The notes under the pieces: generated by a model
What the model saw: only the letters and a program-made list of their open reading frames with translations
Database searches by the model: none
What the model was told of the DNA's origin: nothing
Part shown: in pieces, positions 5,531-64,000 of the stretch
Layout of the letters: every line of letters starts with the position of its first letter
Position numbering within the stretch: the first letter of the stretch is position 1
Source: Podarcis filfolensis
Taxonomy: Eukaryota
Assembly (NCBI GenBank): GCA_964270895.1
Contig: OZ185436.1
DNA length: 64,000 nucleotides
Reading direction: 5' to 3' (one strand)
Translations under genes and position numbers: made by a program

Positions 5531-7949
5531 CAGCCCCACTTGGACCCCTTTAATTGGGTACCCTAATCCCTAGGAGTGGGGAGGGAATTAGAGCTCCGGC
5601 CACCCCCTCCGCTTAGTCTAGGAATCCAACCCAATGCATTAACTGCACGCAAGTTGTGACAGTTGCTATGAGAAATGAAATCTCTCCCCCCCCCCCACAA
5701 GCCCAATTTGTCTGCAGGCAAATTCCTCCCTGGTTCTGAATATGGTGCCCAAATAAATCCACCACAAGCTCTAAGCATGCCCTGCTTGCTCACCTTCAAG
5801 CAGGGCCAACGATAAGTTAAGGGCGGGGGGGAGGTAGGAAGTCCATCGACAAATGCGCTGCTGAGAGCAGGCACAGCCATCTTTTAAAAGTTATGTAGTG
5901 GTGGACCTGAGCGAAGTCAGTCACCTTGCCTGCAACTGACCAGTTTAAATTTAAATTTTGTGGGTGAGTTCTAGCTGCTCCTGTGGCTGACGGAGGACAT
6001 GATGGATCGCCCTTCCAGCTGTGGCTATTCCACAACTGCTACATACCACCGATGACAGTACGCAGACTTTCTGCTTGTTTTCAATATTGAAAGATTCTGC
6101 AGTTGCCTTATGTATTACATTTATACCCTGGCTTTCCTCCAGAGATCTCAAGGTGATATACACACAGAGAAAGGGCAAACATTTCAGTTTACTATCTAGA
6201 CAAGTACTATCATTTTACTATCCTGACAAGATCTATCTGCAGGTAGATCCTAATGCCTTTTCCCCACTGATTCTATTTAAAGACACTTTTCCATTCCAGT
6301 AGATTTTAACAAAAACCAGGGAAGTAGAGAAGGAAGAATCAAAGCAGACTCTCCTCTTGCCCTTCTTCCTGCACATATTGTCAGACCATTACAGTTTTCA
6401 GATTTCAGCTGTCTACCTATATTATTGCACCTGTCACCTCATGTACTCTGCGTTCCTACTCCATCTACTAAACTCTTCTATTTACTGTTTCATTTTGTTC
6501 TCTCAGCTTTAGAGATGTCATTAAGATGCTATTTCCTAACATTGTATGTAGATACCTTGCTGACCCTGGAAGTTTCTCATTCTGTTGTTAAGCAAATGGG
6601 TTCCCTCGGCTGAGTGCAAAAACATCCCTTGTGCCAAAGACGATGAATGTAGCTATTGCTGCACATTCATTCAATATATCACAACCATTGTTCCATTTAG
6701 TACATACAACTGTTAATACAACTATGACTGTTCTCCAGTTTTCAGCATACCTCAAGTCTGTAAGAAACCAATACACTAGAGAAATTCAGTGCTCAACAGA
6801 GAGGGCAGCTGAACTTTGAGAGCAGTTAGAATTTCTCGCTGCTCTTCATTCGTGGTTCTATAGCTTTAGGGTGATGATGACTCCTTAACCACTGTTAAAG
6901 AGGTGGTTTGAGTTTGCACATAACACTAATCTCTGGTTAATATCACCTAAGGTTTATGAACCAACTGTAAACCTTCATTAACAAGCAACCCTAACTATAG
7001 TTTAAAAACGGCAGCTGGACTGCATTTACACATAATGCCAAGCCATGGTCTAATAGACCATAGTTTAATAAAACATGGTTTATTGCTATGTGAGAACCAG
7101 GCCAGTAAATTGCTCAAGGCCATTCAGAAAATTTGAAAGACAACCAGGGACTTCCTAAACCCAGACCCAACACTCTACCCCTCTCAAACAGGAAACAAAT
7201 TTAACTAAAATAGGACTAGAATCCTAATTGAAGCTCGAACATCCCCCCCCCCTTTCTGGGTTTAGATGTGGCATTTGAAAAGTCATTCTATAATACCACA
7301 ACACAAAAAATTATTTAAGATAGGACAACAACAGAGAAGAAACATAAATTTTATTTCAGCCAAAATTAAATTTAATAAAGACATCTGTTGGATGCAAGAA
7401 TGAAAAAACAAGATCCTTAGAACCATCTTGTCTTAGACCATGCCAATTCTCCTAAGCAGTCTCTCTTGCCAACAAACAGAAACTCTGTATTTTCCATTAT
7501 GAAGCAGAGCCAACTGACTCTTAATCCAGATCTCTACTCCCACTTGGCAAAAGCTGAGGAGCAGAAAAGCAAGGAGCTAATATAGTGAGGCAAAATGAAT
7601 TGATCCAGCCAGTTACTCCAGAATTATGGCTGTTCCCCATCTACAAAAAATTGTCATTCCTGGTGAACAATGGAAAAATTACCATTTGCACTGCAGTGTT
7701 AATATGCCAGAGATGCCTCCCCATATATCATCAGAGAACACTAAAACTCTATGCAAGCTGTTGAATAATGCACACAACTGCCAGTTAAACTATTAGGGCA
7801 TGCTTAGAAACAGTGAAGTAAATTGTCACACATGAACAAAGATTATCTACTATCCCTGCTGCTGCCACTAAGCATAGTTTGGAACCCATACAGTTGGCAA
7901 ATGATGCACAGAAAAGTGGCAGAATCCCTGACCAAAGGATGTACAAAAT

Positions 7950-9060
7950 CTACGTTTGAAAGAGACGAGTTGGAGTGAGAATTCAAGATTGCTTAATAGT
8001 GATGACAGGGTAGGATGAGGGGAATTGGTTGGTAGTGGAAGGTTAGGGGTGATTCAATTGAGCCACTATTGAAGAAGTGGGTCTTGGGAAATAATTTAAG
8101 GTCAAGGGGAGTAGGCTTGATGAACAGAGATGTTGTTCCAGCAGGCACAGGAAGCACATCACAGAAAGTAAGGTCAGAGTAGAAGGAAGACATAAAAGCA
8201 AGTTTGACGGAATATGAAGGATCCTGAGAGAGGTAGCAAGAAGTGGTATTATGAGATAAGAAAGAGATGGTACAAAGAGGCAGTGGATGGGAGTGGGGAG
8301 CTTTTAAAGTATGGCCTATAGAAACTTGTCCTTCATGAGGAGTGACAGAGAGTCAATACAAGGTTTAAAGAAATTGGTGGTGTAATGGTTAGCATTAGGT
8401 GATAAAGTGGGTGGACAAAGAAAGGAAGAAAAGTGAATTCAAGATGCAGGAGATGGCAAAGATGCAGAGGTTGTTGTGGTACTCCAGTTGTGCTACACCC
8501 TTCCCAAGTTATATGGTTGGCACCAACTTTAGAAGTCTTAATTTTCTTAGAAATTCACAGGATATTAGTTGCTTAGTGTGAAGTCACTTTGTGGTTTTGA
8601 AACTGTCAGATGTATTTATGTACATTATCAGCTTTCAGTTATTTTGTTACTGAAATTTATTTGTGGCTCTTTTAAACTGAGTTTTATTATACCCCAGTCT
8701 GAGATAATCGACGGTGAAGGCGGGGTTTGAAATGTAAGGAAGGAAGGAGGGTATAGGACATGGAATATAAAATTTTCTAGACCCAGAGATGGGGCAAGGT
8801 GAGGGAAGAGGGAGAGAGGACATAGGATAAGGGCAGGGTACGTGGAGATGGATGTAAACCTATACTGGATCTTGCTAAGCATCTTGCAGAAGTGTAAGAT
8901 ATTGGACTGTGTGGGAGAAAGATGTGAAAGCTTGAAATACTTACAAAAGAAACAGCAGGGCTACTGTGCAAAGAAGGGACGAGGGGTAGATTAGTTTAAC
9001 AAGGAGGAGAGAGTAAATTGACAGTGCATAAGGTCAACATGGTCTTTCCTAAGAGGCGTC
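7950..9060 (-). mobile_element. Old L2-like LINE relic
   Basis: Strongly purine-skewed plus strand; short minus-strand peptides rich in L/P/S/H, typical of decayed L2 ORF2. Boundaries approximate. Confidence 0.5.
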
Positions 9061-21212: not shown

Positions 21213-21562
21213 CATGCCCTCCAACATTTGTCTGATGAAAATAGGGACTTCATATTCCATAATGTCAATTTTACTATTTATAACCCACACATCTTACTGG
21301 GTTCCCCCAGCCACTCTGGGCAGCTTCCAACATATATAAAAACATAATAAGCATTAAAATTTTTTTTTTAAAAAACCTTTCCTATACAGTATTGCCTTCA
21401 GACGACTTGGGGGTCAGCTAACTCCATACCCTCCAACATTTTTTCCAATAAAAATAGGGACATCCTAAAGAAAAGTGGGTCTTTCTGGGATCAAATCAGA
21501 AACCGGGATGGCTTCTCTATATCAGGGGTGTCCCTGGAAAATAGGAATACCTGGAGGGTCTG
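21213..21562. mobile_element. Composite non-autonomous element: duplicated MITE left end, antisense L2 3' tail, then a complete TIR MITE
   Basis: cat(g/a)ccctccaacattt...aaaatagggac occurs at 21213 and 21425; right TIR ggagggtctg ends at 21562; 21265-21400 is the reverse complement of the L2 tail at 62070-62195. Confidence 0.7.
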
Positions 21563-21624
21563 CAGTTCTAAAGTTTCCTCCTCCACCATTGTATCAATAT
21601 ATGTGGAACTAAATAAGTGTGTTA

Positions 21625-22725
21625 TAAAAAATAAAGTGCGAGACTGGCTCCATTATTTTCAGATAATGGAGGCTTACAATTTGGACAAGAAAATTGGCTT
21701 CCAGGTGGAAAAATCTAAATTAGAAACAGAAGTGCTAGAACCTAAAACTAAGATTATGTCAAAAATGTATAACTTGCTGCTGAAATGGAATACACAGGAT
21801 GAAACGGTCAAGTCAGCTATGATTAAATGGGCACAAGATGTTGGACACAACATTATGTTTGCTGACTGGGAACAGTTATGGACCACAGGTATGAAATTTA
21901 CGGCATGTAATGCCTTAAGAGAGAATATTATGAAAATGATATACAGGTGGTACATGACCCCAGTCAAGCTTGCAAAAATATATCATTTGCCCGATAATAA
22001 ATGTTGGAAATGTAAGGAGGTTGAAGGTACATTTTTTCACCTTTGGTGGACGTGCCCAAAGATTAAGGCTTTTTGGGAAATGATTTATAATGAAATGAAA
22101 AAGGTATTTAAGTATACCTTCTTGAAAAAACCAGAGGCTTTTCTCTTGGGCATAGTCGGCCATTTGGTGCCAAAGAAGGACAGAACTTTTTTATGTATGC
22201 TACAACGGCAGCAAGAATACTTATAGCAAAGCACTGGAAGACTCAAGATCTACCCACTCTGGAAGAATGGCAGATGAAGTTGATTGACTGTATGGGACTG
22301 GCAGAAATGACTGGCAGAATCCGCGACCAGGGAGAAGAGTCGGCAGAAGAAGATTGGAAGAAATTCAAGGACTATTTACAGAAATACTATAAAATTAATG
22401 AACTTTAAAAAGATGCTGGATTGAATTTATGTGGTCTCTAGCTGTAATGATAAAGATAACTGGGATTAAAATTGTTTAAGTCATAAAATTTAAAAAAGTT
22501 GATTGGAAAATATTAACATTAGTTAAAAGGAATGTTAAGAGATTAGGATTTGCTGGATTAACAATTTGAACTAGAAAACAAGAAGGGGAGGTATGAGGAA
22601 GTCAAAGAAACATGTTACTGAAAAATTGTTATTGAAACTGATTTGTTTTTAATATTTTTCTTTTTCTTTTTCTTTTTGTGTTTGTATAAAATTGGAAAAC
22701 TTAATAAATATTTATAAAAAATAAA
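21625..22725 (+). mobile_element. 5'-truncated L1-clade LINE, ORF2 C-terminus (CCHC zinc knuckle) and 3' UTR
   Basis: RWYMTPVKLAKIYHLPDNKCWKCKEVEGTFFHLWWTCPKIKAFW; one frameshift near 22190, continuing MYATTAARILIAKHWKTQDLPTLEEW; A-rich tail; perfect 15-bp TSD taaataagtgtgtta (21610-21624, 22726-22740). Confidence 0.95.
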
Positions 22726-36100: not shown

Positions 36101-36604
36101 TCACTAGGCAAGGCCGTTACTCCATCAACTCTTCGGCAATCAAATTATTATCATCAGGATCTATCCCAGCAAGTTGCAAAGCATTCTGTCATTTCAGCTT
36201 GGTATCCAAACCAAATGCAACCAAATCCAGAGCAGCTCCTTCTTACCCAGGCTTGATGCTTTTGTGTTCAGAAACTAAACAAAATAAAAAATTACTTCCC
36301 CGTTGCTGTCACAGTGCTACTTTCACAGGGACCCTCATCCTCTCACAGGCCAAGAAAACATGATCGCTTTGTTCCCCCCAGTCTCTTCCAAAACCAAATT
36401 TTGGAGGAGCAAGAGGGAAACTACGTAAGATTCCTTTATGCATTTGTTTTCATATGAGAATAGTTGCTAATTTCCCCCATCAAACCAATCAAAACATGCA
36501 CTGCCATTCATATCCTTATCAACCATATCCTTATCTATATTGAAACCAGCCACAGGAAATGCACTGCTTTTCAACACTGTTAAAAATTAAATTAGGAGCC
36601 TTAC

Positions 36605-37441
36605 CTCCACCAGATGAGGTGTTGGGTTGAATCCACACATGTTGCAGACCTGCTGCTTACAGGATGTACAGGTATTATAGTTGGAGGGTTCACCGGAGCC
36701 CACGTTGATCTCTGCTTTACAGAGGGGGCACAAGACCCTTGCTTTCGGCACTTCCTTTGGCTTAATTACTTGTTCTGCTTTTGCTTGCTTTGCAGCCGGG
36801 ACAGTTCCAGCCTTACCCTGCATTCCAGGTGTGGTGCCTGGGGCTTTAGGACCAGCTTCTTTGCTGGCATCGCTGAAGACAATTTTCGGAGGCACTTTGC
36901 CAGGGGACTGCTGACTTGGTGGGGTGGCCTCTGGCTGGACAGACATGAGTGTGCTTGCCTGGGTCAAGAGGGAAGCCCCAAATCCAAAGAGTTTACCAGT
37001 GAGGCCCTCTTGGGGCTGCTCTGGCGCCCCAGCACTGGGGGCAGGGGCCGAAGTCTTAGCTGGAGAGTCTCCCACAGTCTTTCTCTGATCAGTGGACGAA
37101 GGCTTTGCTTGCTGATGCTGAGGGGAAGACCTCACCACTTCCTGAGGAGCAGCAGGTTTTGGCTGGGCTTGGCTGGGTGGTTCCCTCTGGGCTGAAGCGG
37201 GGGGTGGTTTGGGGGTCTCAGGCTGCATGACACCAGCACTTGGCCTGGGGCCTGGCTGCATAGTTCCTGGTTGTTTCTCTGGTCCTGGTGCCACATGGGG
37301 CAGTGGCTGTTTGGCTGGGGAATGGGAAGGGGAAAGTGCCGGGGAATGTAGCTGCTGCTGGCTTTTGGAACGGGGAGCAGTGGTCATGTCCATCCCCAAA
37401 GCTCTCTGCATCTGGCAATTTAAACATAACCATTCTTGCAC
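36605..37441 (-). CDS. BSN: Bassoon coding exon (exon 3 equivalent): end of zinc finger 1, Pro/Gln-rich linker, first part of zinc finger 2
   Basis: VQEWLCLNCQMQRALGMDMTTAPRSKSQQQLHSPALSP...QEGLTGKLFGFGASLLTQASTLMSVQPE...LCPLCKAEINVGSGEPSNYNTCTSCKQQVCNMCGFNPTPHLVE; these motifs are BSN-like rather than PCLO-like. Acceptor ttttgtcttctag|GTGCAA at 37441, donor GAG|gtaagg at 36605. Length 837 nt = 279 codons, phase 0-0, in frame with the upstream exon. Confidence 0.97.
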
Positions 37442-59325: not shown

Positions 59326-59725
59326 CTCAGTCAGGTGAGGGTTGGGGTTGAATCCACATTGGTTGCAGACCTTGTTGTGACACTGTGTACAGGTGTTGAA
59401 GTTTGGCTGGTTGGGAGAGGAGGTGAGTTCTGTTGTCTTGCATATAGGACAGAGTGTGCTGCTAGGAAGGGGTGCAATTTGTGGGACAGAATAAGGTGAG
59501 GTAGGGGTGCTGCCTCGATCCGGTGACACAGACGGTGAACGCCCTGTTCTCTGGCTCCTGCTGTCCACTTGGAGTGTCCTCCTTGGCCCATCAGCCTGTT
59601 GGGGGGTCTGCCCATGGCTCCTCATCTCTCTTGTGCTTTCGCTGGTCTGAGCAGCCGGTTTTGGGGATGGGGAAGCTGCTCTCTGTCCAAAGGAGGGGTC
59701 CGATTGATCTGGTCTTCTTGGTGTG
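59326..59725 (-). CDS. BSN: Bassoon coding exon (mammalian exon 2 equivalent): Pro/Ser-rich N-terminal region and first part of zinc finger 1
   Basis: Translation ...[90 protein letters not shown] matches vertebrate Bassoon as I recall it. Acceptor tttcag|CACACC at 59725, donor GAG|gtaata at 59326. Length 400 nt = 1+133x3 (phase 2 in, phase 0 out). Confidence 0.97.
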
Positions 59726-61934: not shown

Positions 61935-62215
61935 AGCAGCAGTGTCACTGCCGCTTACCAGAAAGGCTCAGTGGTGGGGTAGAGGCAGAGGGCCTTTTGG
62001 GTAGTGGCTCCTGCCCTATGGAACTCCCTCCCAGCAGATGTCAAACATACAGCTAAGTGATTTTTAAAAGACATCTGAAGGCAGTCCTATTCAGGGAAGT
62101 TTTTAGTGTGTGATGCTGTGTTGTGTTTTTACTACTTTTTGTTGGGAACAGCCCAAAGTGGCTGGGTCAACCCAGTAAGATATATAAATAAACTAATAAT
62201 AATAATAATAATTAG
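61935..62215 (+). mobile_element. L2-clade LINE 3' end with (TAA)n tail
   Basis: aggcagagggccttt..gtagtggctcctgccctatggaactccctccc (RAF.VVAPALWNSLP) through the tail taataataataat. Confidence 0.85.
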
Positions 62216-62334
62216 GAACTGTTGATGAAAATGACAAGTTATCTTTTAAAATTGTTTGTGTGGTGTATGTGTGTGCTTGTGCAAAAGATGTTAGAACATA
62301 CGATAACCCTCTGTTTTATTATGTTGTAAAATGG

Positions 62335-62545
62335 TCACTACTGAGAAGGCCCTCTGCCTGATTCCCTGTAGCTTTGCTTCTCGCAGTGAGGGAACCACCA
62401 GAAGGCCCTCGGCGCTGGACCTCAGTGTCCGGATTGAACGATGGGGGTGGAGATGCTCCTTCAGGTATACTGGGCCGAGGCCATTTAGGGCTTTAAAGGT
62501 CAGCACCAACACTTTGAATTGTGCTTGGAAACGTACTGACTGCGA
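62335..62545 (-). mobile_element. L2-clade LINE ORF2 C-terminal fragment
   Basis: FQAQFKVLVLTFKALNGLGPVYLKEHLHP...RTLRSSAEGLLVVPSLREAKLQGIRQRAFSVV. Confidence 0.88.
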
Positions 62546-62594
62546 TCCCCAGCCACTGATATTCAGAGACATATTGTCTCTGATACTGGAGATA

Positions 62595-62810
62595 GTATAC
62601 AGGCATTATGACCAGCAACAGCCTTATCCTCCATAAATTTGTCTAAACTCCTTTTAAACTCTCCAAGTTGATGGCTATTGTTTAATTTTGTGATAGAAAA
62701 TTCCATGGTTTTAATGATGCAAGTCAAGAAGTACTTTCAGCTTAATTGGATCGCCTGTTTCTAGCATTTTGACAGAGGGAGAAAAGCTTCTCTCTAGCCA
62801 CTTTCAAAGT
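62595..62810 (-). mobile_element. Old CR1 fragment
   Basis: ttatcctccataaatttgtctaaactcc...gaaaattcca...aagaagtacttt resembles CR1 ORF2 antisense. Confidence 0.5.
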
Positions 62811-63379
62811 GAATCTATCACAGCTCAGAACATATTCATTATAACACTTGTAGCAGGTGCCATTTTAAGGCACTATTTTTGCTATTTTAATTGATCCTTA
62901 ATTATCACTAAAATATTTTTATGTCTATAAGAGAGGAACAGCACTATAATTGCATAATGCTACAATATTACTGTAGTATAGTTATAGAACTACTGGGTTA
63001 TGTTGCTATAGAACTATATCTCTTTCATTAAAAAAAAAACACCTGATAAAGTGTAATAAATCACTTGCCTTAGACAAGAATTTCAGTTTGCCTAATAGAA
63101 GGGCTAGTCCTGAATAATGGAGGATTTTAATGAGAAGTGTCTATACAGACTTGTGCTTCTAAACCAGTTCAAAAAGCAATTTAACAAGTACAGTACTTTC
63201 CTACATTCCACTTTCCAAATCAAAACCCTTTTTAAAAGACAGAAGAGGCACACCAAAGGCATCTATACTTGTGGAGATGACCCTATTGTTCTGTTCTTCT
63301 AGAAAAAGTCAGGCTTTCTGGGGTCTGAGTAAAGACAGAAGAACGAGGTGGGCAATAGAAGATGTCAGTGATTGGGAGA

Positions 63380-63545
63380 TGGCATCATGTGCATGTCCAT
63401 AAAAATGTGTGAAAGAAACATGACCCTGCATATTACAACCAATATGATCTGGGGGCTGGCATAACTTTTATGTGAGGAAACGTTTTAGCTCTGAAAAATA
63501 TAAGCAAAGGGAAGGACATGATAGAAGTATATGAAATTATTGGTA
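63380..63545 (+). mobile_element. Old CR1 fragment
   Basis: tatgaggaaacg-like and aagggaaggacatgatagaagtatatgaaattat motifs (YEERL...GDMIEVYKI-like). Confidence 0.45.
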
Positions 63546-63725
63546 TGATTAAAGTAATATGCTTTATTTATTATCAAAAGCACATTAACATTCAAATCTG
63601 AACAAAAAATGCAACATAAATTAATGAACTCAAAATAAAAATTTGCCCATCAATTGCAAGAAATTCAAAACAAAAATTTTTTTTCCTTCCAGTAGCACCT
63701 TAAAGACCAACTAAGTTAGTTCTTG

Positions 63726-63763
63726 GTATGAGCTTTCGTGTGCATGCACACTTCTTCAGATAC
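63726..63763 (-). ncRNA. Identical hammerhead-like motif on the BSN-sense strand
   Basis: Exact mirror copy of 63772-63809 in the inverted arm. Confidence 0.6.
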
Positions 63764-63771
63764 CTGAATCT

Positions 63772-63809
63772 GTATCTGAAGAAGTGTGCATGCACACGAA
63801 AGCTCATAC
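63772..63809 (+). ncRNA. Minimal type-I hammerhead ribozyme-like motif
   Basis: GUAU-CUGAAGA-A-GUGUGCAUGCACAC-GAAA-GC-UC-AUAC: stem I GUAU/AUAC, core CUGANGA, palindromic stem II, GAAA, palindromic AGCU stem III, UC cleavage site (after 63805). Confidence 0.65.
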
Positions 63810-64000
63810 CAAGAACTAACTTGGTTGGTCTTTAAGGTGCTACTGGAAGGAAAAAAAATTTTTGTTTTGACTATGGCAGACCAACACGGCTACCTATCTG
63901 TAACAAGAAATTCAAAGTTACAATTTATGTATGTTTACTAAATTCAAGGAGGGATTACACCCCAAATGTGTACTGAATTGCACTTTAAAATAATAATTTT

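What the first reader, a model, noticed from the sequence alone, without database searches (positions are those of the whole stretch)
63726..63809. Head-to-head pair of minimal hammerhead ribozyme motifs in a BSN intron, one sense to the pre-mRNA
Seen: both strands read GUAU CUGAAGA A GUGUGCAUGCACAC GAAA GC UC AUAC, with every hammerhead core box in type-I order, a 4-bp stem I and a self-complementary AGCU stem III. There is one extra A between the core and stem II. Established: Penelope-like elements carry minimal hammerheads in their pseudo-LTRs, and such motifs cleave poorly as monomers and better as dimers through the palindromic stem III. Inference: the minus-strand copy lies in the Bassoon primary transcript, about 4 kb upstream of exon 2, so it could nick intron 1 co-transcriptionally. 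Its own antisense copy is 8 nt away and should fold over it, giving a ribozyme with a built-in antisense lock.
Basis: partly seen in the sequence, partly recalled or inferred. Interest (0 to 1): 0.75.

Follow-up and report, generated by a model that had tools for sequence, protein, structure and literature searches.

The report
Penelope retroelement palindrome with locked hammerheads
The two hammerhead-ribozyme motifs are real, but they are the ordinary built-in ribozyme motifs of a very abundant Penelope-like jumping gene that recently landed as a 234-bp back-to-back double fragment in a Bassoon-type gene intron, where they are buried in a 99-bp hairpin and almost certainly do nothing for the host gene.

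Summary
Observation confirmed. The same 38-nt minimal type-I hammerhead motif lies at 63772-63809 (+) and 63763-63726 (-). A structural descriptor finds only these two sites in 64 kb and none in 300 random windows.

The motifs form the centre of a 99-nt-arm, 99% complementary inverted repeat (63665-63763 / 63772-63870). This is a 234-bp insertion (63670-63903) flanked by a 13-bp target-site duplication.

Contigs of DNA runs from three closely related organisms carry the exact empty site. The inserted sequence belongs to a hugely multi-copy family. Its layout matches the published signature of Penelope-like elements (PLEs): two 5'-truncated copies head to head, a 33-nt "tail" on one arm only, and the hammerhead near the 3' end. 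The motif has every published hallmark of PLE minimal hammerheads, including the "extra A".

No Rfam hammerhead model matches. On the gene strand the antisense arm is transcribed first. Forcing the ribozyme fold costs about 64 kcal/mol.

Verdict: a young, ordinary PLE mini-insertion with no evidence of use by the host. The scan has already noted many such motifs, palindromes included, elsewhere in this genome. The one point of modest interest is that the locus looks like a clean footprint of PLE priming from both DNA strands.

The parts
63657..63669 (.). Left copy of the 13-bp target-site duplication (CAAGAAATTCAAA)
   Evidence: Identical to 63904-63916. The empty-site contigs join 63656 to 63904, with 13 letters fitting either side.
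63670..63771 (-). 5'-truncated PLE copy, sense on the minus (gene) strand and without a tail. Its last 5 nt (63764-63768, TTCAG on the minus strand) match the family sequence upstream of helix I. The origin of 63769-63771 is unclear.
   Evidence: It is 98.9% identical to the plus copy over 94 nt. The family's upstream consensus ...TGTTTCAG|GTAT comes from loose ends in three runs.
63725..63764 (-). Minimal hammerhead motif on the gene strand: helix I 5 bp, CUGAAGA, bulged A, helix II GUGUG/CACAC with loop CAUG, GAAA, AGCU helix III half-site, C17 at 63730. The predicted cut lies between 63730 and 63729.
   Evidence: Motif features follow Cervera & de la Pena 2014.
63764..63771 (.). 8-nt spacer (loop) of the palindrome, at the junction of the two half-copies
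   Evidence: loose ends at 63764 and 63771.
63772..63903 (+). 5'-truncated PLE copy, sense on the plus strand. It starts exactly at helix I and ends with the tail.
   Evidence: Summed contig depth stays high up to 63903, and family copies break off at 63904.
63772..63809 (+). Minimal hammerhead motif on the plus strand (antisense to the gene): helix I 4 bp, C17 at 63805. The predicted cut lies between 63805 and 63806.
63871..63903 (+). 33-nt AC-rich 'tail', present on the right arm only
   Evidence: The inverted repeat ends at 63870, while the multi-copy signal continues to 63903. The tail matches the 30-40-bp PLE tail and the roughly 34-nt tail between the two RT start sites of Anolis Poseidon.
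63904..63916 (.). Right copy of the 13-bp target-site duplication
63665..63870 (.). Inverted repeat with 99-nt arms and one mismatch (63712 T versus 63823 G). As RNA it forms one long hairpin on either strand.
   Evidence: MFE is -173.9 kcal/mol with z = -27.5.
59326..59725 (-). Context: host-gene exon encoding the first half of Piccolo/Bassoon zinc finger 1 (acceptor ttcag|, donor |gtaat)
   Evidence: Pfam zf-piccolo, E = 1.2e-18. Sequence and translation.

Best explanation
This is a recent 234-bp insertion of a very abundant Penelope-like retroelement (PLE) family. It consists of two heavily 5'-truncated 3'-terminal fragments joined head to head. The hammerhead motifs are the element's own minimal hammerheads, which lie about 65-100 nt from the 3' end of every copy. 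Any very short double insertion therefore produces a 'head-to-head hammerhead pair'.

Most likely mechanism (inferred):
1. The PLE endonuclease made nicks staggered by 13 nt.
2. Both 3' ends primed reverse transcription of element RNA. The left end started at the proximal internal RT start site (no tail). The right end started at the distal site (33-nt tail).
3. Both cDNAs stopped within 5-8 nt of each other, at the 5' edge of helix I, and were joined.

At this locus the ribozyme is inert. In a gene-strand transcript the antisense arm comes first and zips the hammerhead into a 99-bp helix, and there is no second sense copy in cis for the dimer that such motifs need. If the intron is transcribed, the realistic RNA-level consequence is a long perfect dsRNA hairpin.
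For: - Empty site: one single-copy contig in each of three DNA runs (organisms B, C, D) joins 63656 to 63904, skipping 247 nt with 13 ambiguous letters. Flank divergence is only about 0.3-0.6%.
- Target-site duplication: 13-bp exact copies.
- Multi-copy family: 6,600-8,300 contigs laid. Summed depth is 1e5-2e6 over 63646-63917, against 12-42 in the flanks. The signal ends sharply at 63904.
- PLE signatures: the inverted 5'-truncated copy plus a 30-40-bp tail at one end is the published PLE insertion signature (Craig et al. 2021).
- Comparison with Anolis Poseidon: the hammerhead overlaps the ORF start, RT starts at two internal sites bounding a ~34-nt tail at about +85..+119, and the enzyme nicks and extends both DNA strands in vitro (Frangieh et al. 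2024). Here, counting from the ATG in loop II (63790), the arm ends at +81 and the tail at +114.
- Motif hallmarks of PLE min-HHRs are all present: a bulged nucleotide between A9 and G10.1, the G10.1-C11.1 pair, a palindromic 15.2/16.2 and a short helix I.
- Lock: the hairpin folds at -183.4 kcal/mol, against -119.4 with the hammerhead helices forced. The helix I pairing probability is about 4e-44.
- The isolated monomer is no more stable than shuffled sequence (z = -0.44).
Against: - No RT/GIY-YIG ORF of the family was seen. The window holds no other copy, so PLE identity rests on architecture and motif, not on homology to a curated PLE.
- The element is not sequence-similar to Poseidon_Ac beyond the shared layout (compared by eye).
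- No Rfam hammerhead model matches.
- Contigs show that the empty allele is present in B, C and D. They cannot exclude a filled allele there.
- The two-primer model does not explain why both cDNAs stop at nearly the same place. A snap-back hairpin later trimmed by the endonuclease at the tail boundary is not excluded.
- Self-cleavage was not tested.
Confidence: 0.85

Rival explanations
1. Functional intronic ribozyme: the minus-strand hammerhead nicks the Bassoon pre-mRNA co-transcriptionally. The antisense arm would act as a regulated lock, opened for example by helicases or by A-to-I editing of the hairpin.
For: The core and all helices are intact on the gene strand, with the family-typical 5-bp helix I. 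Family copies show no variant at 10% or more of depth in the core boxes. The only common changes inside the motif are C17>U and C11.1>U, both tolerated positions. PLE hammerheads can cleave when helped by the element's protein.
Against: The insertion is absent from three close relatives, so there is no conservation. The lock is 99 bp, is transcribed first and costs about 64 kcal/mol to open. There is no sense partner in cis for the obligate dimer. PLE min-HHRs cleave poorly even as dimers. In Anolis no RNA-seq reads end at the hammerhead site, even for the active element. The one RNA-type run laid here covers only the repeat and not the flanks.
Confidence: 0.03
2. The palindrome is itself a non-autonomous unit, copied as a whole from a master palindromic copy. 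On this view it was not formed de novo at this insertion.
For: The arms are almost identical and the unit has clean ends and a target-site duplication. The scan has noted other Penelope palindromes in this genome (unchecked notes).
Against: The bin holding the junction (63748-63781) has 3-5 times less summed depth than its neighbours in every run. Many family copies run on past 63771 into a different, shared upstream sequence, or break off at 63764. Most copies therefore do not share this centre. The other palindromes noted by the scan have different sizes, 151 and 204 bp, one of them spacer-less (unchecked).
Confidence: 0.08
3. Hairpin RNA gene or substrate: the insertion acts as a miRNA or endo-siRNA precursor, or as an ADAR-edited dsRNA that affects the host gene.
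For: The hairpin is a near-perfect 99-bp helix with MFE -173.9 and z = -27.5. Sub-threshold Rfam matches to several miRNA-precursor models reflect the hairpin shape.
Against: All miRNA matches lie well below the gathering scores, for example 66 against 90 bits. The insertion is lineage-specific. No RNA evidence exists for this locus. Editing or dicing of such a hairpin would be a by-product, not evidence of function.
Confidence: 0.05
4. A DNA transposon (MITE) with long terminal inverted repeats that happens to carry hammerhead-like boxes.
For: The structure is palindromic and has a target-site duplication.
Against: The ends are asymmetric, with a 33-nt tail on one side only. The inverted repeat spans each whole arm rather than only the termini. 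Other family copies are not palindromic around this centre. The motif matches the PLE min-HHR in all details.
Confidence: 0.02

Closest known systems
Minimal hammerhead ribozymes (min-HHR) of Penelope-like elements (Cervera & de la Pena 2014, PMC4209133; Lunse et al. 2017, cited in PMC6765202)
   Same: Type-I order, CUGANGA/GAAA/UH core, an unpaired nucleotide between A9 and G10.1, the G10.1-C11.1 pair, a long helix II, a 4-5-bp helix I, and no loop 3 with a palindromic AGCU that can only form helix III between two molecules. Copy number is massive. Reported in reptiles. 'Dual min-HHRs on opposite strands' were already noted in that paper.
   Different: This exact sequence was not found in the text library. 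Helix II is itself a perfect 14-nt palindrome. Here the two motifs are only 8 nt apart and fully complementary.
Poseidon_Ac (PAc) of Anolis carolinensis and its insertion mechanism (Frangieh et al. 2024, PMC11167929)
   Same: The hammerhead overlaps an ATG in helix/loop II. The 3' end of insertions lies about 80-120 nt downstream, at two alternative RT start sites that bound a ~34-nt AC-rich tail. The enzyme nicks and extends both strands, and the target is AT-rich.
   Different: No evident sequence similarity outside the core boxes. In this copy the reading frame from the ATG stops after 9 codons. No ORF-bearing relative was seen.
PLE complex insertions: inverted 5'-truncated copy plus a one-sided tail (Craig et al. 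2021, PMC8557442; Evgen'ev & Arkhipova 2005)
   Same: An inverted 5'-truncated copy abuts the main copy. A 30-40-bp tail is present at one end only. 5' truncation is extreme.
   Different: Both copies are truncated to about 100-130 nt, so nothing but the 3' terminus with the hammerhead remains. There is no pLTR-ORF body.
Conserved intronic hammerheads of amniotes (HH9, HH10; de la Pena & Garcia-Robles 2010, cited)
   Same: A hammerhead motif in the sense orientation inside an intron of a vertebrate gene.
   Different: HH9 and HH10 are canonical, fold as monomers, are conserved at orthologous sites and match Rfam models. This motif is minimal, masked, lineage-specific and matches no Rfam model.

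Membership tests
PLE minimal hammerhead (min-HHR) | Core boxes CUGANGA ... GAAA ... UH in type-I order, with helices I and II | tested here: met
   Present on both strands, with 0 hits in 300 random windows.
PLE minimal hammerhead (min-HHR) | Unpaired nucleotide between A9 and G10.1, and a G10.1-C11.1 closing pair | tested here: met
   A at 63783 (+) and 63752 (-). Helix II runs GUGUG...CACAC.
PLE minimal hammerhead (min-HHR) | No stable helix III, with palindromic 15.2/16.2 allowing a dimeric helix III | tested here: met
   A-GC-U forms the AGCU palindrome. The AGCU duplex alone is worth only -2.5 kcal/mol.
PLE minimal hammerhead (min-HHR) | Lies in a PLE (pLTR / 3' terminus) or a PLE-derived repeat | tested here: inconclusive
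   The PLE insertion signatures are present (tail, inverted copy, target-site duplication, multi-copy). No RT/GIY-YIG ORF of the family was available to link it.
PLE minimal hammerhead (min-HHR) | Site-specific self-cleavage after C17, as a dimer or with protein help | not testable with these tools
   Needs in vitro transcription and cleavage assays.
Rfam hammerhead families (Hammerhead_1, _3, _II, HH9, HH10) | Covariance-model score at or above the gathering threshold | tested here: not met
   No hammerhead model reached E<=10 on 62000-64000 or on 63766-63820. The published min-HHRs were found with relaxed descriptors, not with these models.
Penelope-like element insertion | Target-site duplication and an empty site | tested here: met
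   13-bp duplication. Precise empty site in three DNA runs.
Penelope-like element insertion | 30-40-bp tail at only one end, with an adjacent inverted 5'-truncated copy | tested here: met
   33-nt tail at 63871-63903 on the right arm only. Inverted copy at 63771-63670.
Penelope-like element insertion | Single ORF with a telomerase-like RT and a GIY-YIG endonuclease (autonomous copy) | tested here: not met
   This copy is 234 bp and has no ORF. No family relative lies in the window. This is expected for a 5'-truncated copy, but it leaves the family unassigned to a PLE clade.
miRNA precursor families (MIR1222, mir-559, mir-3149, mir-466, mir-1) | Covariance-model score at or above the gathering threshold | tested here: not met
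   Scores against thresholds: 66.4 vs 90, 59.8 vs 95, 47.6 vs 100, 41.6 vs 85 and 35.6 vs 45.6 bits. The matches occur on both strands, as expected for any long palindrome.
Conserved intronic hammerheads of amniotes (HH9/HH10) | Conservation at the orthologous intron position across species | tested here: not met
   The orthologous site is empty in organisms B, C and D.

The most novel reading that the evidence does not exclude
The locus is a clean natural footprint of target-primed reverse transcription from both DNA strands by a PLE. Each 3' end of a break staggered by 13 nt primed its own cDNA. One started at the proximal and one at the distal of the two internal RT start sites, which so far have been shown only in vitro for Anolis Poseidon. 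Both cDNAs stopped within 5-8 nt of the 5' edge of the hammerhead, which hints at a defined RNA 5' end or a strong RT stop there. The family sequence just upstream also looks like a splice acceptor. If this is general, young mini-palindromes with empty-site alleles in sister taxa would give in vivo evidence on how PLEs build their inverted repeats and one-sided tails.
Probability: 0.4. Interest if true: 0.35.

Novelty: already known. Interest (0 to 1): 0.15.

Why it matters
It matters little for the host gene. A lineage-specific transposon fragment with a masked, weak ribozyme motif is not a plausible regulator of Bassoon.

There are two practical lessons:
- In PLE-rich reptile genomes, 'hammerhead in the sense strand of gene X' will recur many thousands of times and should be read as transposon anatomy.
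- The 'antisense lock' follows automatically from the inverted insertion architecture of PLEs.

The modest positive value is mechanistic. The insertion has an exact empty site in close relatives, one tail-less arm and one tailed arm. It is the kind of natural product that could test, in vivo, the two-RT-start-site and both-strand priming behaviour reported in vitro for an Anolis PLE.

Tried and rejected
- Rfam at E<=10 on 2 kb and again on 55 nt gave no hammerhead model. It returned only sub-threshold miRNA and sRNA matches on both strands, which I reject as generic hits to a long palindrome.
- blastn of both half-copies against the window found no further copy of the family, so no family alignment or covariation test could be made.
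- Full-text search for the exact motif found 0 papers. The supplement of Cervera 2014 is not held, and Lunse et al. 2017 is not held.
- A simple snap-back model for the palindrome is rejected as the sole mechanism. The 4-nt AGAT/ATCT microhomology near the centre would give a different register. A pure fold-back would also copy the tail, or the flank, into both arms, which is not seen.
- A search for a Bassoon N-terminal 'MGN' start exon between 59737 and 64000 (-) found nothing convincing, so exon 1 is not in the window.
- The search of earlier findings by place near the finding and by sequence returned nothing.
- The RNA question could not be answered. All listed runs are kept as contigs. 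None is on record as RNA for this stretch. The one RNA-type run laid covers only the repeat.
- The big protein searches were not used. The Bassoon identity of the host gene rests on Pfam zf-piccolo plus my memory of the Bassoon sequence.

Full report
**1. The observation**

The motif is GUAU-CUGAAGA-A-GUGUGCAUGCACAC-GAAA-GC-UC-AUAC. It lies at 63772-63809 on the plus strand, and its exact reverse complement lies at 63763-63726.

The 30-nt core stretch occurs exactly twice in the window, against none expected in shuffles. I also wrote a structural descriptor. It required helix I of at least 4 bp, CUGANGA, an optional one-nucleotide bulge, helix II of at least 4 bp closed by G-C, GAAA, a palindromic 15.2/16.2 insert and UH. 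It finds only these two sites in 64 kb and none in 300 random windows with the same dinucleotide make-up. On the minus-strand copy helix I is 5 bp, and on the plus copy it is 4 bp.

No Rfam hammerhead model matches at E<=10, on 2 kb or on a 55-nt stretch. The only Rfam matches are sub-threshold hits to miRNA-precursor models on both strands. Any long palindrome gives such hits.

**2. What surrounds the motifs**

The two motifs are the centre of a much larger object. It is an inverted repeat with 99-nt arms (63665-63763 and 63772-63870), 99% complementary, with an 8-nt spacer. The arms differ at one place: 63712 T versus 63823 G.

Thirteen bases, CAAGAAATTCAAA, occur at 63657-63669 and again at 63904-63916. 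Between the end of the right arm and the second copy lie 33 further bases (63871-63903) that have no partner on the left.

**3. It is an insertion, it is young, and it is multi-copy**

I laid Logan contigs of three DNA runs from three differently labelled organisms (coded B, C and D) on 63000-64000.

- In each run one single-copy contig (790, 4,711 and 2,172 nt) runs straight from 63656 to 63904. It skips 247 nt, and 13 letters fit either side. This is the exact empty site. The insert is 234 bp (63670-63903) plus one copy of a 13-bp target-site duplication.
- The flanks of these contigs differ from the window by only a few letters per several hundred, so these are very close relatives. The insertion is recent or still polymorphic. 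Contigs show that the empty allele is present. They cannot exclude a filled allele in those organisms.
- Over 63646-63917, 6,600-8,300 short contigs per run pile up. Summed word depth is 1e5 to 2e6, against 12-42 in the flanks, and the signal stops sharply at 63904. The tool warns that this is not a copy number. It does show an extremely abundant family that includes the 33-nt right-hand extension.
- An RNA-type run (the label is a guess) from another organism covers only the repeat and none of the flanks. It says nothing about transcription of this locus.

**4. Which kind of element**

The layout is the published signature of Penelope-like elements (PLEs). Craig et al. 2021 describe extreme 5' truncation, an inverted 5'-truncated copy abutting the insertion, and a 30-40-bp 'tail' at only one end.

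Frangieh et al. 2024 studied Poseidon of Anolis carolinensis:
- The hammerhead overlaps the ORF start, with the ATG in helix II.
- Reverse transcription starts internally at two sites that bound a ~34-nt AC-rich tail at about +85 to +119.
- The enzyme nicks and extends both DNA strands in vitro.

Here an ATG sits in loop II at 63790. Counting from it, the tail-less arm ends at +81 and the tailed arm at +114, and the tail is AC-rich.

The hammerhead shows every hallmark that Cervera and de la Pena 2014 list as emerging, beyond their descriptor, in PLE minimal hammerheads:
- the G10.1-C11.1 pair;
- a palindromic 15.2/16.2 with no loop 3;
- a long helix II and a 4-5-bp helix I.

That paper also reports such motifs in reptiles, and reports pairs on opposite strands.

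The link to PLEs has limits. I saw no RT/GIY-YIG ORF of this family, and the window holds no other copy. There is no evident sequence similarity to Poseidon_Ac outside the core boxes (compared by eye). The exact sequence is not in the text library.

**5. Anatomy of the junction**

Loose ends in all three DNA runs show that family copies which continue upstream of 63772 read ...GACTTCTGTTTCAG|GTATCTGAAG. The spacer read on the minus strand is AGATTCAG, so its last five bases (TTCAG) belong to the minus-strand copy.

- The minus copy is 63771->63670 (102 nt, no tail).
- The plus copy is 63772->63903 (132 nt, with tail).

Both stop within 5-8 nt of the 5' edge of helix I. The bin that holds the junction has 3-5 times less summed depth than its neighbours in every run. 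Most family copies therefore do not share this centre, which argues that the palindrome was made at this insertion and not copied from a master palindrome.

**6. Most likely mechanism (inferred)**

A 13-nt staggered break leaves two 3' ends. The right-hand flank's bottom-strand end primed a cDNA from the distal RT start site, giving the arm with the tail. The left-hand flank's top-strand end primed a second cDNA from the proximal start site, giving the arm without a tail. The orientation of both arms and the target-site duplication fit this geometry.

At the left junction five bases (TCAAA / TTTGA) are shared between target and element. The two cDNAs were then joined near the 5' edge of the hammerhead.

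Two points remain open. I cannot explain why both stop at almost the same place (note). A fold-back intermediate later trimmed by the endonuclease at the tail boundary is also not excluded. A simple snap-back on the AGAT/ATCT microhomology gives the wrong register.

**7. Does the ribozyme act on the host transcript?**

The host gene is on the minus strand. A zf-piccolo exon (59326-59725, acceptor ttcag|, donor |gtaat) lies 4.0 kb downstream of the minus-strand motif, and the next exon ends at 37441. From memory, the peptide is that of Bassoon. I ran no further search on this. No start exon lies between 59737 and 64000. The motif is therefore in the preceding intron if exon 1 lies beyond the window, which was not shown here.

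On that strand the antisense arm (63870->63772) is transcribed before the hammerhead (63763->63726). Each ribozyme nucleotide therefore meets its perfect partner as it emerges.

- The hairpin folds at -183.4 kcal/mol. Forcing helices I and II of the hammerhead gives -119.4, a penalty of 64 kcal/mol.
- The ensemble probability of helix I is about 4e-44.
- The isolated 38-mer is no more stable than shuffled sequence (z = -0.44).
- The AGCU helix III duplex is worth -2.5 kcal/mol.
- Two free monomers prefer a 14-bp intermolecular helix II duplex (-30.6).
- A transcript carries only one sense motif, so there is no dimer partner in cis.

In the literature, PLE minimal hammerheads cleave poorly even as dimers. 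The Anolis one needs the element's protein. No RNA-seq reads end at its cleavage site, even for the active element. Together with the empty site in close relatives, a role in the host gene is very unlikely.

If the intron is transcribed, the plausible by-product is a long perfect dsRNA hairpin. I could not test editing or small RNAs.

**8. A weak point in favour of constraint on the motif within the family**

Across thousands of contigs, only two variants inside the motif reach 10% of depth. They are C17>U and C11.1>U, both tolerated by hammerheads. The core boxes show none. A young, recently expanded family would look the same, so this is not strong evidence.

**9. Comparison and verdict**

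The motif works like, and by every sequence criterion is, a PLE minimal hammerhead inside a PLE-type complex insertion. It is not a member of any Rfam hammerhead family by score. It is also not a relative of the conserved intronic hammerheads HH9/HH10.

The scan has already logged 143 hammerhead notes in this genome, several of them Penelope palindromes. Follow-up agents reached the same reading on other DNA. I treated those as leads only.

The kind of feature is already known, and interest is low. The only point worth a specialist's glance is the clean empty-site-backed footprint of two-sided priming from the two RT start sites.

Noticed in passing
window 63758-63772, and loose ends at 63771: In other family copies the sequence just upstream of hammerhead helix I reads ...CTTCTGTTTCAG|GTAT. 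That is a polypyrimidine tract plus CAG|G, which looks like a splice acceptor abutting helix I. It recalls the D. virilis Penelope intron, which ends at the 5' edge of helix I. It may relate to why both half-copies here stop at that point.
   Followed up: partly
window 63665-63669 / 63866-63870: The inverted repeat runs 5 nt into the left target-site duplication. TCAAA pairs with TTTGA at the end of the tail-less arm. This is 5-nt microhomology between the target end and the element at the proximal RT start site. The duplication also contains AAATT, in line with the AT-rich / ATT nicking preference reported for Anolis Poseidon.
   Followed up: no
window 63790-63819 (+): The ATG in loop II of the hammerhead sits where Poseidon_Ac has its ORF start. 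Here it opens a frame that stops after 9 codons (M H T K A H T K N stop). This family's 3' terminus is therefore not simply the start of an intact ORF, or the copy derives from a non-coding relative.
   Followed up: no
window 63177 and 63223: Relative to the window, the contigs of all three related organisms carry 16 extra bases after 63177. Two of them carry 10 extra bases after 63223, and the third carries 5 after 63225. These are small lineage-specific indels in the intron.
   Followed up: no
window 59326-59725 (-) and 36587-37441 (-): Two host-gene exons encode Piccolo-type zinc fingers 1 and 2 (Pfam E = 1.2e-18 and 3.4e-24). Each finger is split by an intron after ...NP(N/T)PHL(T/V)E. The peptides recall Bassoon, from memory and not searched.
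   Followed up: partly
window 21528-22226 (+): A 232-aa ORF has no Pfam match at E<=0.01. It was not examined further.
   Followed up: no
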